DNA from: Octopus sinensis | Taxonomy: Eukaryota | NCBI RefSeq assembly: GCF_006345805.1 | Contig: NC_043010.1 | Span: forward strand, 64,294,001 to 64,358,000 | Direction of reading: 5' to 3' | DNA: 64,000 bases | Shown: piece after piece, positions 20,223 to 63,490 of the stretch | Layout: every line of letters starts with the position of its first letter | Position numbering within the stretch: position 1 is the stretch's first letter | Made by a program: the position numbers and the translations under genes | Notes under the pieces: model-generated | The model's database searches: none | What the model was told of the DNA's origin: nothing | The model's input: only the letters and a program-made list of their open reading frames with translations

Positions 20223-20357
20223 TCTGCGATAAAGGCACTTATGGACTACATTGCAACAAAACATGTAATTGTATTGATGATGACAACTGCAACCCGATTC
20301 ATGGTGCATGTCCTAGAGGCTGTGCAACTGGATACACGGGTTCCGACTGTCAGGAAC
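20223..20357 (+). CDS. EGF-like exon A2
   Basis: ttttacAG acceptor, GTAAGT donor, 135 nt, phase 1-1. CDKGTYGLHCNKTCNCIDDDNCNPIHGACPRGCATGYTGSDCQE. Confidence 0.92.
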
Positions 20358-20936
20358 GTAAGTATACGTCTATACTAATAATCAAACTATTTCCCCACAA
20401 CTCACACACATGATTGTTCTTAACTTTAATTAAGTGGGATACAAGTGCATAAACTCATTAAAAATTTTTTTCTATTTGATATTGAGATGTCTTACTTAAA
20501 ATTTTGATTGTTATAATCTTACTTTAACAATGTCCATCTCACCTATATACATGTATTGTATATAGGTATTGTATATATACATGTATTGTATATACATGTA
20601 TTGATTAATTCAAGTTGTCATACTCTCTACAAGAGCATAAGTATATAAATACTTATTTTGCTAAGTATTGAGTTATGTTGAAGTAGCTGGCATTCAATTG
20701 GCGTATCAAGTTTCAGGCATTTTGATTGGGTTTTGGAAAGAAAATTCACAAAAAAGTCACTTCTATTGATTTTTTAATGGCTTTACAGGGTGACTGGGGA
20801 AATGTAAAGATGTGCTCGACCACCCTTGGATGGTTTTGAATGACCATAGAAAGTGCGAGCCCTCTAACTGAAAAATTGTGGATACGTATAAAGGACACAC
20901 ATGCAGACATTTTGCCGTTTATATATATAGAGCTTA

Positions 20937-22408
20937 CTAGCAGTATCGCCCGGCGTTGCTCGGGTTTGTAAGGGAAATAACTATATAAGCATTTTTAGAG
21001 AGTTATAGCCGAAAAATAGCAAAAAAATGCATTAAAAATGGAAAAAAAATTAAGCTAAATTCCTTTTTAAATCTTTGACACATCGTAGATATTTTTAGAG
21101 AGTTACTTCCCTTATATAATAGTGAAAAAAATGCATTAAAATGGAAAAATATGATGGTAAATTTTTTTTAAATCGTAGACTCATCGTAGACGCGTGCTAA
21201 TACCCAGAAGGGCTCGATATGACTCACGACTTTAAGATACCCGCTTTTGGTGAAACTGCACCGCAAAATGTGGGAGTAGTTACGAATCTAAATTGTAAGA
21301 GACAGACACACAACTTCAGTTTTATATATAAAGATATAAGCCACGTAGTTATATACACATACTTTGTTATATACACATTCTTAAAAGAAAATGTTATTTT
21401 GAACACAACATTTATAAAGAATAAAATATTTTTTGGTTTTTCTTAACCCTTTCGTTACTATATTTCTGACCAAAATACACCCCTTATGTGTTTCAATTAT
21501 TTTCTAACGTAATCATAAATTTAGTCTGGTTTCATTAAACAACTATAACTTTTTTATTTATCAATATATTAACATGAATTTTGGAAGATAATTTAATGAA
21601 ATGTTCTCAACCAATTCTATACTATAATTTTTGTCACAAAGGTAGATACAGGTAAATTCAACAATATATAAAATTATTAAAATTTTGTTCAAACATCGTT
21701 ATAGAAAATGGGTTATTAGCTAATATTCAATTGGGTATACAACAAAATTTTACAATAGAATTTGTTATTCTGGGTAACTTTCTGATACCCATAATAATAT
21801 TTATGGCAAAATAGGCCTTAATTTCATTTAAGGTTGTGGGAAATAACAAACTATCCTTTCTTTCGCTTTGTTTACGTTTAGCGTAACAGTTCGTTTCCGC
21901 CGTAATGATTTCAAATAGGCTCATTCGAAAAAGTAAAAGAAAATAGTCTAAGGCTTTACTCTTCAGGGAAAGTCTGTGGCTTGGTCCAGTTTCTTCAGAA
22001 AAATCACCGAAAGAAACAGTTTTTAAATTTTCACTCCATTCAGGTGCCAATTCATTTTCTTTATCGCTGTCGGATTCACTGTTTTCACTTTAATCGTTGC
22101 ACACTTGCAAAGAGAAAGGAGTAATTAGGGTGATAGATTCAGTGAAACAGTTCACTCCGTTTGTGTGTGTGTGCGTGTGCGTGTGCTGTAGCCCACACTA
22201 AGAAAAGCATTTGACATACACACCACAATGTGAGTTTTCTCTAAATTTTGCTTAATTGGGGTTGAAATTTTAAAAAGTGGACCTGGCACGACCCGATGCA
22301 TTCTACTCTTAAAAATGCTAGGTAAATTGTAATTGAAGAAATCCTATATTGTAGATTTCTATAAGAGACAAAGGGAGGCAGATAAAATCTGCCTTTTATA
22401 ATAAGAGA
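20937..22408 (-). mobile_element. Non-autonomous Helitron, copy 1
   Basis: On the minus strand it starts TCTCTTATTATAAAAGGCAGAT and ends with the CCCGAGCAACGCCGGG hairpin + CGATACTG + CTAG. No TSD. Confidence 0.85.
21727..22100 (-). pseudogene. piggyBac-type transposase N-terminal fragment inside the Helitron (also 23213-23536, 45196-45519)
   Basis: Acidic SENSESDSDKE leader, then F..ETGP..LDYFLLLF..FEIITAETNCYA..PTTLNEIKAYFAINIIMGIRKLP, matching the conserved N-terminal block of piggyBac (DDE_Tnp_1_7) transposases. No catalytic region. Confidence 0.7.
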
Positions 22409-61127: not shown

Positions 61128-62890
61128 TGAAAATTTGACAGGAAAATCCGCAAGCTATTGACTTGTAATAAGATGCACCATCCAAAGGCAGATGTGGATC
61201 GTCTTTACCTTCCCAGAGCTCAGGGAGGTCGAGGTTTGATCCAGCTTGAACTTACATACAAAACGACCACAATCGGACTGGCCAAATACCTTGAAGCAAC
61301 CAACGATTGGATGCTAAGACTTGTTGAAAAACATGAAAGGCCTAAAAAACTTCACTCTATTCTCAAAGAGAGCAAAAAATTCGCTGCTGATCCCTTAGAT
61401 ACCCACCAGATTGAGCAGGGTGAAGGAAATGCACCAACTACAGCTGTAATTAAATAAAATTAATTGCAAAGACAAAAGCACATGAAAATTTAGCTAGCAG
61501 ATGGGAACAGAAACCTTTCCATGGCAAGTATGTGGCCCGTAGCAAACAAGCTGATGTCCACCAGAAACACACGCACCAATGGTTACGAAGTTCAGGGCTA
61601 AAAGCAGAGAGTGAAGGTTTCATATTGGCTGCTGAAGACCAAAGGTTTTTTACCCGGAACTACCAAGCCAATGTGATGAAAAATGGAGCTGACCCAAAAT
61701 GCCGATTCTGTAACGATGAGATTGAAACAATAGACCACCTAATCTCAGGGTGTAGAGTCTTAGCACCTGCAGAATATAAAGCAAGACATGACAGAGTCGG
61801 CCAGTATTTACACTGGACAATATGTCAGCATTACAAAATCAAAACCGCTGACGAATTGTATAAACATCATCCTGAAGCTGTGACTGAGGGAGAAAATGTG
61901 TTGATTCTATGGGTCTTCCCCATGCAGACCGACACGACTATAAAGGAATAAATGGAGAATGTACAGATGAAAAGTTGATACCAGATAACAATGAAAGTCA
62001 AAGATGTTCGAGTGACATCTGGAGCAAAGATAAGGAGCACGAAAAGGATGCTGAATGGTTATGGTTGCAAGAACTGAAACAAACAGTAGTCTGTCCAAAA
62101 CAGACAGGACTAGTCATTTTAGTTCGGAATCAGATGGAGTTCAAGGCTACTGGATCAAATGATTTGGTGAATGTCATGCACGAATAGCTGCACAAATCAA
62201 CACCTTGTTAAATGCCGACCAAGTAACACCAGAGTGGTTGACATTGGGTAGGACAGTGCTGTGCTTGAAAAACATTCGAAAAAGGCAATACGGTACACAA
62301 CTACTGGCCGATATCTTGTTTGCCACTTACGTGGAAATTATTAACTGGAATACTCGCAGAGTCAATGTACGAACATCTGGAAAAAAATTTGGAGTCCTGC
62401 CACATGAGCAGAAGGGTTGCTAGCGTAAGTGCAGAGGTACCAAGGATCAACTCCTGATAGACAAAACTGTTCTTAGAGACTGTAAGAGGAGGAAAAGTAA
62501 CTTAGCCATGTCACGGACCGACAATAGTAAGGCGTACGATATGATCCAACATTCTTGGATTATGGAATGTATGAACCTATTTGGTATTGCATCGAATGTT
62601 GAGCGATTGCTTGGAAAAAGTATGGTGAATTGGAGGACGGACCTGGCAGCATACGAAAGAAGTTTAGGGAAAGTAGAAATCAGAAAGGCATCTTCCAAGA
62701 GGACTGCCTGTCTCCATCGATCTTTGTACTGTGCTTGATTTCACTAACACTGATTCTCAGGAAAGCAAAAGCTGGGTATGTATTCAAAAGCCAGCAACAA
62801 ATAGTCAACCACTTGTTATTCATGGATGACCTCAAACTTTATGGTAAAGATGAAGCCCAAGTCAGTTCCCTCGTTGATACGATGTACTAG
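61128..62890 (+). mobile_element. Fused R4/Dong fragments (REL-side fragment joined to RT fragment)
   Basis: CRFCNDEIETIDHLISGC and RHD in ORF 61532..61951. Junction at ctataaa 61938-61944, then RT motifs to LLFMDDLKLY. Confidence 0.85.
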
Positions 62891-63355
62891 CAAGTTGAGC
62901 GATTGCTGAGAGATTTGGCTTTCTTATTTGTTTGTATATCATTGCTTTTGTTGTTGCTGATAATGTTATTTGCATTTGGGTAAACTCAGATCGAGAAGGC
63001 AGTCCCATGTTATTCAACCACTACTACTGCTGTTGTTTATATTCTGATGAATCCTGACTGATTAGAAAGATCTACGGTTATAGATATTCCACCCGTGGCC
63101 ATCTTAAGAGATATTTAGGTCTCCATTGTTTAATGTTTCTTGTTTGTAGTCTAACAGGGTATTGTTTGAGGAAGATTTGGTCGCTGTTACTAGCAGATCA
63201 ATCGAAAATATTGAGGCGCCGTAGTTGGTTAAACGATTTCCTATTATGGTTGTCTTGGTCATCAGTCATTCATTGATTTTTTGCCATCTTTTCAATTATG
63301 AAACGAGTTCTTTACTGTTTTACGCAATAAAAGGTATAATACGTTTGTTTCACAG

Positions 63356-63490
63356 TCTGCGCGAGAGGCGAGTATGGACAATATTGCACCAAAACATGTA
63401 GATGTTCTGGTTATGACAACTGCAACCCGATTTATGGCACATGTCCTAGAGGCTGTGCATCTGGATACAGGGGTTACGACTGTCAGCAAA
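63356..63490 (+). CDS. EGF-like exon A4
   Basis: tttcacAG acceptor, GTAAGT donor, 135 nt. CARGEYGQYCTKTCRCSGYDNCNPIYGTCPRGCASGYRGYDCQQ. Confidence 0.92.

What the first reader, a model, noticed from the sequence alone, without database searches (positions are those of the whole stretch)
20223..63490. Hypervariable EGF-exon array: exons diverge about 25% almost only at amino-acid-changing sites while flanking introns stay near-identical
Seen (hand alignment): C2 vs C3 has 35/132 nt differences, 21/43 residues changed and 0 silent changes in the 22 shared codons. A3 vs A4 has 31/135 nt, 18/44 residues and 0 silent in 26. B2 vs B3 has 37/135 nt, 19/44 residues and 2 silent in 25. All 8 Cys and the structural Gly are kept. 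The 110 nt after A3 and A4 are identical, about 100 nt after C2/C3 are identical, and the 167 nt before B2/B3 differ at 4 sites. Established: exons evolving faster than introns around a fixed Cys scaffold is the signature of diversifying selection in conotoxins, snake-venom genes and recognition loci, and MEGF10/Draper/SCARF-type EGF repeats are ectodomains of recognition and phagocytosis receptors. Inference: silent sites track the low intron divergence, so the duplications are recent and the amino-acid change is accelerated rather than old exons with homogenised introns. This looks like a rapidly diversifying immune, allorecognition or gamete-recognition receptor built from about 20 kb three-exon cassettes.
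Basis: partly seen in the sequence, partly recalled or inferred. Interest (0 to 1): 0.95.

Follow-up and report, generated by a model that had tools for sequence, protein, structure and literature searches.

The report
Fast-diverging EGF exon cassettes in octopus receptor
Inside one Octopus sinensis cell-surface receptor gene, a three-exon EGF cassette has been copied eight times; the copies have swapped about 40% of their amino acids while introns and silent sites differ by only about 3%, which is a strong case of selection for protein change.

Summary
The window is Octopus sinensis C14:64,294,001-64,358,000. It lies inside a gene of at least 217 kb, laid out as EGF, F-type-lectin/F5-8-C domain, EGF, eight ~19-33 kb cassettes of three phase-1/1 EGF exons, EGF, then a TM exon. 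PTP-like exons sit about 41 kb downstream. Between neighbouring cassettes the exons differ at 22-40 of 132-135 nt, against 2.7-4.1% over 6-16 kb of non-exon DNA.

Silent positions in amino-acid-invariant codons vary as often as introns (10.6% v 9.5%). Inside changed codons the nucleotide differences are close to the minimum needed (100 observed, 86 minimum, 123 if saturated). This argues against old exons with homogenised introns. One-ratio omega is 2.7 (p=4e-5), and nonsynonymous divergence is about 10x intron divergence. The O. bimaculoides orthologue model has one cassette, and no donor copies exist elsewhere in the genome.

Three qualifications apply:
- Divergence is episodic. Cassettes I/V and II/VI are near-identical, and II/VI carries most of the change with a marked tyrosine gain.
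- Introns exchange sequence between units, so they are poor clocks.
- The gene is not MEGF10/Draper-type, and an immune or recognition role is inferred, not shown.

The parts
4519..4651 (+). C-type EGF exon of unit III ('C0'), 133 nt. It is a near-copy of 20223-20357 with two 1-nt deletions next to homopolymers, so it is either a pseudo-exon or an assembly error.
   Evidence: Window 1-5300 has 1.3-3% gap openings against other units, compared with 0.3% or less elsewhere.
15590..15724 (+). A-type EGF exon, unit IV (135 nt, phase 1-1)
   Evidence: It differs from 34728-34862 by one silent base.
16204..16205 (.). Junction of a ~5.07 kb deletion that removed exon B from unit IV. The deleted stretch corresponds to 35343-40408 of unit V.
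20223..20357 (+). C-type EGF exon, unit IV
34728..34862 (+). A-type EGF exon, unit V
35682..35813 (+). B-type EGF exon, unit V (132 nt)
43584..43718 (+). C-type EGF exon, unit V
54541..54675 (+). A-type EGF exon, unit VI. This is the highly derived, Tyr/Trp-rich type, shared only with unit II.
55496..55627 (+). B-type EGF exon, unit VI (derived type, identical to unit II)
63356..63490 (+). C-type EGF exon, unit VI (derived type)
15590..34727 (+). Cassette unit IV (A, no B, C, long intron)
34728..54540 (+). Cassette unit V (A, B, C, long intron), used as the reference unit
54541..64000 (+). Cassette unit VI, which runs on about 10.3 kb past the window end
30182..31954 (-). Intronic non-LTR reverse-transcriptase ORF (590 aa, open). 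It was copied along with the cassette and serves as a neutral yardstick.
   Evidence: PF00078, E=2e-34. The degenerate copy at 10892-12412 lies in a stretch that is 3.0% diverged.

Best explanation
A three-exon cassette encodes three 8-Cys laminin/MEGF-type EGF domains, with every exon in phase 1-1. It was amplified in tandem to eight copies inside one Octopus sinensis gene for a single-pass membrane protein. That protein has an F-type-lectin-like domain and an EGF stalk, and is probably a receptor tyrosine phosphatase.

After duplication, selection fixed amino-acid replacements at nearly every non-scaffold position of some copies. The Cys/Gly/Tyr scaffold, the splice sites, the silent sites and the introns stayed at the neutral level of about 3%. 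Change was episodic. The lineage leading to cassettes II/VI took most of it and became tyrosine-rich and basic. A later ~75 kb block duplication then copied three already-diverged cassettes.

Introns continue to exchange sequence between units.

Shown: anatomy, divergence contrast, omega above 1, recency of exon divergence, intron reticulation. Inferred: that the driver is ligand or pathogen recognition, that all cassettes are expressed, and that the PTP exons belong to this gene.
For: Anatomy:
- There are 22 intact exons with AG/GT sites, in 8 units spanning C14:64.253-64.409 Mb.
- They are flanked by lectin-domain exons, unique EGF exons and a TM exon with a GT donor.

Divergence contrast:
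- Exons differ by 29-40 nt between neighbouring units.
- All non-exon unit pairs differ by 2.7-4.1% over 6-16 kb.

Neutral sites in the exons are young:
- Silent positions in invariant codons are variable at 4/37.7 (10.6%), against 421/4425 (9.5%) intron columns.
- For V v VI there are 2 silent differences in 46 synonymous sites. P=1.6e-5 if dS were 0.3.
- Inside aa-different codons, V v VI shows 100 observed nt differences, 86 minimum and 123 expected if synonymous codons were independent. V v III/IV shows 43/41/64.
- Codon pairs that are both 4-fold degenerate differ at the third base in 1 of 6-7 cases.
- The between-family controls (A v C) are saturated: 57 observed against 57 random, with 10/17 same-aa codons silently different.

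Selection:
- GY94+F3x4 gives omega 2.73 over all codons, half of which are invariant scaffold. Against omega=1, 2dlnL=17.0 and p=3.7e-5. Per family, omega is 1.9, 4.1 and 2.4.
- Pooled V-VI pN is 0.29 against pS 0.14, Fisher p=0.004.
- Pairwise ML omega is 2.6-9.9.

Direction:
- Units II/VI have 12-15 Tyr and net charge +9. Other units have 3-7 Tyr and net charge -8 to +2, and O. bimaculoides has 5 Tyr and +2.
- Three of the 5 aa differences between II and VI are gains of Tyr in VI.

Recency and origin in place:
- The O. bimaculoides orthologue model has one A-B-C cassette between the same flanking domains.
- II/VI exons are 17-24/44 aa from it, against 11-16 for the others.
- The derived A and B types have no relative closer than 59% anywhere else in the 2.72 Gb assembly.
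- There are no local 12-mer donors above chance.

The scaffold is still constrained. None of the 12 nonsynonymous differences between the recent pairs hits an invariant codon (P=4e-4).
Against: - Intron distance barely tracks exon distance: 2.9-4% for pairs with 20 or more exon differences, against 2-2.5% for pairs with 5 or fewer. Taken literally, that would compress about 30 substitutions per exon into a very short interval.
- Introns are reticulate: 49% of informative site pairs fail the four-gamete test, Rm is at least 23, and the PHI-like p is 0.011. Timing from introns is therefore unreliable, and some homogenisation is real.
- Some loops are replaced wholesale, for example 13 of 15 consecutive nt at 54590-54604 v 34777-34791. 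That is awkward for stepwise point substitution.
- Recombination between exon types is suggested by mosaic patterns and can inflate omega tests.
- No transcript data were available. The NCBI model covers units I-II only and ends in an intronic repeat.
- Unit III's C exon is frameshifted in the assembly.
- The I-III / V-VII block duplication could be an assembly artefact of two haplotypes.
Confidence: 0.7

Rival explanations
1. Concerted evolution with selection for diversity. The exon types are old. Frequent gene conversion or unequal crossing-over between units keeps introns and silent sites homogenised, and selection removes conversions that would erase amino-acid differences.
For: - The intron tree is star-like and nearly decoupled from exon distance.
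- Shared intron variants favour physically adjacent units (III-IV 27, VII-VIII 21, I-II 17, V-VI 16, II-III 16) and are mutually incompatible.
- Intron divergence is slightly raised within 100 nt of highly diverged exons: 3.5-4.2% against 2.9%.
- All three exons of a unit share the same depth of divergence.
Against: - Third positions inside changed codons lie 1-2 nt from the selected sites, so they should keep old silent divergence. They do not.
- Conserved blocks of 9-15 nt lie between variable codons. Homogenising them would need conversion tracts shorter than 15 nt.
- Divergence stops within a few nt of the splice sites.
- The O. bimaculoides model has a single cassette, and all O. sinensis copies share derived residues.
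Confidence: 0.12
2. A mutational process rather than selection. Candidates are exon-targeted hypermutation, an ASSET-like 'segment switch', or patchy templated conversion from other EGF exons.
For: - Runs of fully replaced codons occur, for example CRDKDVC to CPFRWNC with 13 of 15 nt changed.
- The exon spectrum is transversion-rich (46 ts: 64 tv against 712:478 in introns), and 15% of variable exon columns are multi-allelic against 3% in introns.
- ASSET has been described for snake toxins with conserved introns and an unknown mechanism (PMC2711939).
Against: - A raised mutation rate would also hit silent sites in the same 135 nt. Those are at intron level.
- No donor exists in the genome for the derived types, and none exists locally.
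- No compensated frameshift relates the segments (inspection).
- The replaced runs coincide with inter-cysteine loops, where all positions are free to vary.
Confidence: 0.07
3. Artefact or dead DNA. Under this reading the array is mis-assembled (haplotypes placed in tandem, polishing errors) or is an unexpressed pseudogene array drifting neutrally.
For: - Window 1-5300 has a high density of 1-nt indels, and the C exon there is frameshifted.
- The I-III / V-VII blocks are 2.7-3.3% apart and could be haplotypes.
- The NCBI model stops after unit II.
- No short transcript-derived ORFs were found.
Against: - Neighbouring cassettes on one contig carry the contrast, whatever the status of the block duplication.
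- The differences are codon-structured, frames are open, all 22 exons keep their splice sites and all 8 Cys, and omega exceeds 1. Errors and neutral drift do not produce these features.
- Gene models in three Octopus species splice the A, B and C exons in order.
Confidence: 0.05

Closest known systems
Molluscan MEGF / galactose-binding-domain receptor-like protein tyrosine phosphatases (for example the SudRes1 schistosome-resistance cluster of Biomphalaria sudanica, PMC12297450)
   Same: - The ectodomain combines a galactose-binding-like (F5/8-C / F-lectin fold) domain with many MEGF-type EGF repeats and a single TM.
- The genes are clustered on one chromosome next to PTP exons.
- The extracellular part is diverse, with EGF-domain gain and loss.
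- Relatives in Pecten, Mytilus, Haliotis and Mercenaria carry PF00754+PF22633+PF00102.
   Different: - The PTP domains were not linked to this gene. There are only two exon-like hits 41-50 kb downstream.
- The diversity here lies between tandem cassettes within one gene, not between paralogous genes or alleles.
- No phenotype association is known.
Accelerated evolution of exons with conserved introns, as in crotaline PLA2 genes, conotoxins, three-finger toxins (ASSET, PMC2711939) and primate Morpheus/NPIP (last item and PLA2/conotoxin from my own knowledge)
   Same: - Recent duplicates have exons about 10x more diverged than introns.
- dN exceeds dS.
- The cysteine scaffold is fixed.
- Whole surface loops are replaced.
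   Different: - This is not a secreted toxin.
- The duplicates are internal repeats of one membrane-receptor gene.
- Introns show ongoing exchange between units.
- The change is concentrated in one cassette lineage.
MEGF10 / Draper / CED-1 / PEAR1 and SCARF1 (SREC) phagocytic receptors
   Same: - They share the same 8-Cys laminin-type EGF repeat.
- These proteins are among the best database hits, at 32-39% identity.
- The nearest solved sequence relative is Tie2 EGF1-3.
   Different: - There is no EMI domain. The N-terminus is a lectin-fold domain.
- The cytoplasmic motifs are unknown.
- The gene is not orthologous to these receptors.
Dscam-type arrays of alternative exons
   Same: Both have tandem arrays of duplicated, diverged exons encoding one domain type in a recognition receptor. 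All exons here are symmetric (phase 1-1), so skipping would keep the frame.
   Different: - Here the three exon types are interleaved as cassettes about 20 kb apart.
- The NCBI model includes two consecutive cassettes in one product.
- No evidence for mutually exclusive splicing was available.

Membership tests
MEGF10/Draper/CED-1 | N-terminal EMI domain | tested here: not met
   The Pfam scan of the O. sinensis and O. bimaculoides models finds only F5_F8_type_C and F5_F8_type_C_2. The fold search gives F-type lectin modules.
MEGF10/Draper/CED-1 | Array of 8-Cys laminin-type EGF repeats | tested here: met
   The pattern CxxGxYGxxCxxxCxCx5Cx4GxCxxGCxxGxxGxxC is present in all 22 exons. Database hits to MEGF10, Draper and PEAR1 have E=1e-98 to 1e-40. 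There are also Tie2, netrin and laminin LE matches.
MEGF10/Draper/CED-1 | Cytoplasmic NPxY / YxxL signalling motifs | not testable with these tools
   The TM exon ends in a GT donor. The cytoplasmic exons lie beyond the DNA I could fetch.
Molluscan MEGF/GBD receptor PTP (SudRes1-type) | Extracellular galactose-binding-like domain plus MEGF repeats | tested here: met
   The architecture is described in PMC12297450.
Molluscan MEGF/GBD receptor PTP (SudRes1-type) | Single-pass transmembrane segment | tested here: met
   The exon at C14:64,423,919-64,423,999 encodes ...GTGILVCLVLIAVCVYCW. It matches the O. bimaculoides TM at 64% identity.
Molluscan MEGF/GBD receptor PTP (SudRes1-type) | Intracellular (tandem) PTP domains | tested here: inconclusive
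   PF00102 exon-like hits lie on the same strand at C14:64,464,595 and 64,473,380, the second with stops. They are not shown to be spliced to this gene.
F-type lectin domain | F-type jellyroll fold | tested here: met
   The AlphaFold model has pLDDT 82. Foldseek finds the lectinolysin lectin domain, SpX, eel agglutinin and striped-bass FBP32, with E=5e-12 to 5e-9 and target TM-score 0.76-0.84 for the single-domain chains, 0.41 for two-domain FBP32.
F-type lectin domain | Fucose motif H-X24-R-X-D-X4-(R/K) and cation motif h2DGx (PMC5712786) | tested here: inconclusive
   AVDGT is present, and H69-X24-R94 is present in O. sinensis and O. vulgaris. The acidic and last basic positions do not fit (R-N-T-QKSR-F). 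O. bimaculoides has Leu at the His position.
Accelerated-evolution loci (exons > introns) | dN significantly above dS and above intron divergence in recent duplicates | tested here: met
   Omega is 2.73, p=3.7e-5. pN is 0.29 against 0.03 in introns.
Dscam-like mutually exclusive exon arrays | Only one exon of each cluster is included per transcript | tested here: not met
   The only available model (P0001) joins A, B, C of unit I to A, B, C of unit II. No RNA data were available, so this is weak evidence.
Diversity-generating retroelement-like mutagenesis | Adenine-specific differences between a template and a variable repeat, with a dedicated RT | tested here: not met
   The differences involve all four bases. 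The intronic RT is an ordinary non-LTR element on the opposite strand, copied along with the cassette.

The most novel reading that the evidence does not exclude
The cassette array may be a germline-encoded repertoire of binding modules. Under this reading, cassette amplification, intron-level homogenisation that keeps the units recombinogenic, and selection for tyrosine-rich paratope-like surfaces act together. Cassette-level alternative splicing may add to this, since all exons are phase 1-1. Together these would give a cephalopod receptor many specificities. That would be an EGF-based counterpart of Dscam, VLR or FREP diversification. Alternatively, a real segment-switch mechanism may replace inter-cysteine loops.
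Probability: 0.1. Interest if true: 0.9.

Novelty: new member of a known kind. Interest (0 to 1): 0.66.

Why it matters
Cephalopods have no described hypervariable immune or recognition receptor family. Here one gene shows, within about 165 kb, a clean natural experiment. Eight copies of the same three domains share near-identical neutral DNA, yet up to 21 of 43-44 residues are replaced per domain on a fixed disulfide scaffold.

The locus offers three things:
- It gives a candidate recognition receptor related to the snail MEGF/GBD receptor phosphatases linked to schistosome resistance.
- It gives a set of natural EGF-scaffold variants for binding studies.
- It is a tractable case for separating positive selection from concerted evolution in tandem repeats.

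Tried and rejected
- **O. bimaculoides DNA.** The look-up for the orthologue found nothing on record.
- **O. vulgaris DNA.** The gene range exceeds 100 kb, so no DNA was returned. Between-species intron and dS comparisons were therefore impossible.
- **Transcript-derived ORFs.** A third protein search with a 179-aa query for short ORFs that cross cassette junctions found none.
- **Other EGF arrays.** Whether the pattern is general in this genome is untested.
- **Pfam.** It gives no hit to the EGF part at E<=0.01.
- **Rfam.** Nothing reached gathering score.
- **Cytoplasmic domains.** A tblastn search with Pecten, Haliotis and Sepia tails found nothing in the 34 kb after the TM exon.
- **Templated donors.** Local 12-mer matches were at chance level, 0-7 per exon against 3.9 expected.
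- **Compensated frameshift or reverse complement.** I looked for these origins of the replaced loop by eye and saw none.
- **Pairwise NG86 alone.** It understates the contrast (pN/pS 1.2-4), because path averaging in multi-hit codons assigns changes to silent sites. I therefore added the minimum-path test.

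
Full report
**What and where.** The window is G000:C14:64,294,001-64,358,000 of a 2.72 Gb assembly. The best protein hit is an NCBI model from Octopus sinensis on a contig of the same length, 68,403,164 bp. The window is about 38% G+C. It consists of about 20 kb direct repeats. Six-frame scanning finds Cys-rich open frames only on the + strand.

I name the three exon families by their order in the gene:
- A (135 nt): 15590-15724, 34728-34862, 54541-54675.
- B (132 nt): 35682-35813, 55496-55627.
- C (135 nt): 20223-20357, 43584-43718, 63356-63490, plus a 133-nt copy at 4519-4651.

Every exon starts with two bases of a split codon and ends with one, so all are phase 1-1.

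**Check of the observation.**
- 35 nt and 21/43 aa with 0 silent changes in 22 shared codons.
- 31 nt and 18/44 aa with 0 silent in 26.
- 36-37 nt and 19/44 aa with 2 silent in 25.

The flank statements also hold. Non-exon substitutions between units are 1.5-4.5% per BLAST segment. In unit V v VI and V v II comparisons the three exons are the three most divergent of about 800-1000 sliding windows.

**The whole array.** I fetched 100 kb on each side. The array has eight units, I-VIII, with 22 intact exons. The window holds the tail of III, then IV, V and most of VI. Unit IV lacks exon B through a 5.07 kb deletion with its junction at 16204/16205.

The gene is laid out as follows:
- upstream, an EGF exon, two exons of an F5/8-C domain and another EGF exon;
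- the eight cassettes;
- downstream, one unique EGF exon and a TM exon with a GT donor.

PF00102 exon-like hits lie 41-50 kb further on the same strand. I could not fetch that DNA.

An AlphaFold model of the NCBI product has mean pLDDT 82. Its N-terminal domain matches fucose-binding F-type lectin modules, with target TM-score 0.76-0.84 for the single-domain chains. Its EGF part matches laminin, netrin and Tie2 EGF repeats. The fucose motif is only partly kept.

**New structure in the data.** Exon types recur with a period of about 75.6 kb. I~V and II~VI differ by 0-5 nt per exon. III~VII differ by 8-12 nt. Adjacent units differ by 29-40 nt.

Over 6-16 kb of non-exon sequence, all 28 unit pairs differ by 2.7-4.1%. 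I-V is at 2.7% and I-II at 2.9%.

One third of variable intron columns are shared by two or more units. The commonest partitions join physical neighbours: III-IV 27, VII-VIII 21, I-II 17, V-VI 16 and II-III 16. These partitions are mutually incompatible. Of site pairs, 49% fail the four-gamete test. The minimum number of exchanges is 23 in 15 kb, and a PHI-like permutation test gives p=0.011.

So introns do exchange sequence between units, and they are not a clean clock.

**Old exons or fast exons?** Four results favour fast exons.
1. Across all copies, silent positions in amino-acid-invariant codons vary at 4 of 37.7 synonymous sites (10.6%). Intron-flank columns vary at 9.5%.
2. Inside codons that encode different residues, the nucleotide differences are close to the minimum the genetic code requires.
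   - V v VI: 100 observed, 86 minimum, 123 expected for independent synonymous codons.
   - V v III/IV: 43 observed, 41 minimum, 64 expected.
   - Third bases of codon pairs that are both 4-fold degenerate differ in only 1 of 6-7.
   - The ancient A-v-C comparison is fully saturated.
   - Silent sites 1-2 nt from the selected sites could not have been homogenised separately, so the exon divergence itself is young.
3. Divergence starts and stops within a few bases of the splice sites. Intron divergence rises only from 2.9% to about 4% within 100 nt of the exons.
4. The O. bimaculoides orthologue model has the same flanking domains but one A-B-C cassette.
   - All O. sinensis copies share derived residues relative to it.
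   - II/VI exons are 17-24/44 residues from it, against 11-16 for the others.
   - The O. vulgaris model has an A exon identical to unit I.

**Selection or mutation?** A raised mutation rate is excluded, because silent sites in the same exons are not raised. No donor copies exist. The derived A and B types occur only in units II and VI, and their next relatives are other array copies at 53-59% identity. Local 12-mer matches are at chance level.

A one-ratio codon model gives omega 2.73 over all codons, although half of them are invariant scaffold. Against omega=1, 2dlnL=17.0 and p=3.7e-5. Pooled V-VI pN is 0.29 against pS 0.14 (p=0.004), and against 0.03 in introns (p=3e-58).

The exon spectrum is transversion-rich and often multi-allelic.

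The II/VI lineage gained tyrosines, reaching 12-15 against 3-7 elsewhere, and gained positive charge. Three of the five residues that differ between II and VI are new Tyr in VI. This points to directional selection on a binding surface.

In the recent pairs (I/V, II/VI) there are 12 nonsynonymous differences and 1 synonymous. pN is 1.9%, about the intron level. None of the changes hits a scaffold codon (P=4e-4).

**Caveats.**
- Timing is uncertain because introns recombine. Read literally, most exon change happened in a short interval before the 75 kb block duplication.
- Some loops are replaced wholesale, resembling the unexplained 'ASSET' pattern of snake toxins.
- Exon types show some mosaicism, which can inflate omega tests.
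- The C exon of unit III has two 1-nt deletions next to homopolymers, in a stretch (window 1-5300) with many 1-nt indels. This is probably a consensus error. If it is real, the frame is broken, because joining B directly to an A exon that starts with AG makes TAG.
- The block duplication might be two haplotypes placed in tandem.
- Expression rests on gene models only. The NCBI model ends in an intronic repeat after unit II, and its tail is disordered in the model. No transcript-derived ORFs were found.

**Comparison with known systems.** By architecture the gene belongs with the molluscan receptors that combine a galactose-binding-like domain, MEGF repeats and a TM, with or without PTP domains. 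In Biomphalaria sudanica these receptors form the SudRes1 schistosome-resistance cluster and show extracellular diversity.

It is not MEGF10/Draper/SCARF, because it has no EMI domain. The evolutionary pattern, with exons far more diverged than introns on a fixed cysteine scaffold, is the one known from venom PLA2, conotoxin and three-finger-toxin genes and from primate Morpheus. Here it occurs between internal cassettes of one receptor gene in a cephalopod.

I found no paper describing this locus.

**Verdict.** The functional label is plausible but untested. It is a new member of a known kind, and worth following up with cross-species arrays and long-read RNA.

Noticed in passing
window 1-5300: This stretch (tail of unit III) has 1.3-3% gap openings against the other units, compared with 0.3% or less elsewhere. 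Nearly all are 1-nt indels at homopolymers. It looks like a poorly polished part of the assembly, and it contains the frameshifted C exon at 4519-4651.
   Followed up: partly
window 30182-31954 (-) and 10892-12412 (-): A non-LTR reverse-transcriptase ORF (PF00078) lies in the long intron. It is open for 590 aa in unit V and broken in unit IV. It was copied along with the cassette, and the stretch is about 3.0% diverged.
   Followed up: partly
window 21727-22089, 23213-23545, 45196-45558 (-); 20913-22408 v 22390-23893: There are piggyBac-like transposase fragments (PF13843). A local 1.47 kb tandem duplication is present only in unit IV.
   Followed up: partly
window 8502-8627, 27690-27821, 49124-49255 (+): A repeated intronic ORF (DLRIFWLGMGKGAAVLFSKGLHFEVRQILLGPD...) occurs once per unit, about 4-7 kb after each C exon. 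The NCBI model uses one copy as its last exon, so that model is probably truncated.
   Followed up: partly
window 4976-5014 and about 44032-44070: A 17-bp-stem palindrome (CTAGCACTATGACCCGG CAACG CCGGGTCATAGTGCTAG) lies about 330 nt after the C exon. The stem is exact at 4976-5014. The copies in units V and VI carry one or two base changes. It is missing from unit IV, where homology ends at 20687.
   Followed up: no
window 35553-35612 v 55367-55426: A small extra divergence peak (9 of 60 nt) lies 70-130 nt upstream of exon B, in the A-B intron. It is the only non-exon hot spot between units V and VI apart from microsatellites.
   Followed up: no
exon junctions, e.g. 35813 | 54541: B exons end in T, and most A exons begin with AG, so skipping a C exon creates TAG. 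The derived A exons begin with GG, which gives TGG. Skipping B (A to C) stays in frame, as in unit IV.
   Followed up: partly
G000:C14:64.70-65.33 Mb; C25:10.78-10.93 Mb; C18:54.81 Mb: Further arrays of related EGF exons occur here. Several on C14 lie next to PTP-domain exons, and some are duplicated on unplaced contigs (C8134, C9321). This points to a chromosomal cluster of EGF-PTP receptor genes.
   Followed up: no
window 12532-12702, 51514-51672, 5486-5614, 24038-24178, 46016-46156: Trinucleotide microsatellites read as poly-Tyr, poly-Cys or poly-Ser frames. They account for the minor divergence peaks near 46218.
   Followed up: no
P0002 (Pecten maximus relative): The scallop homologue has a block of about 190 aa, made of four EGF repeats, duplicated almost identically within the protein. 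Cassette duplication therefore recurs in this family, but without hyperdivergence there.
   Followed up: no
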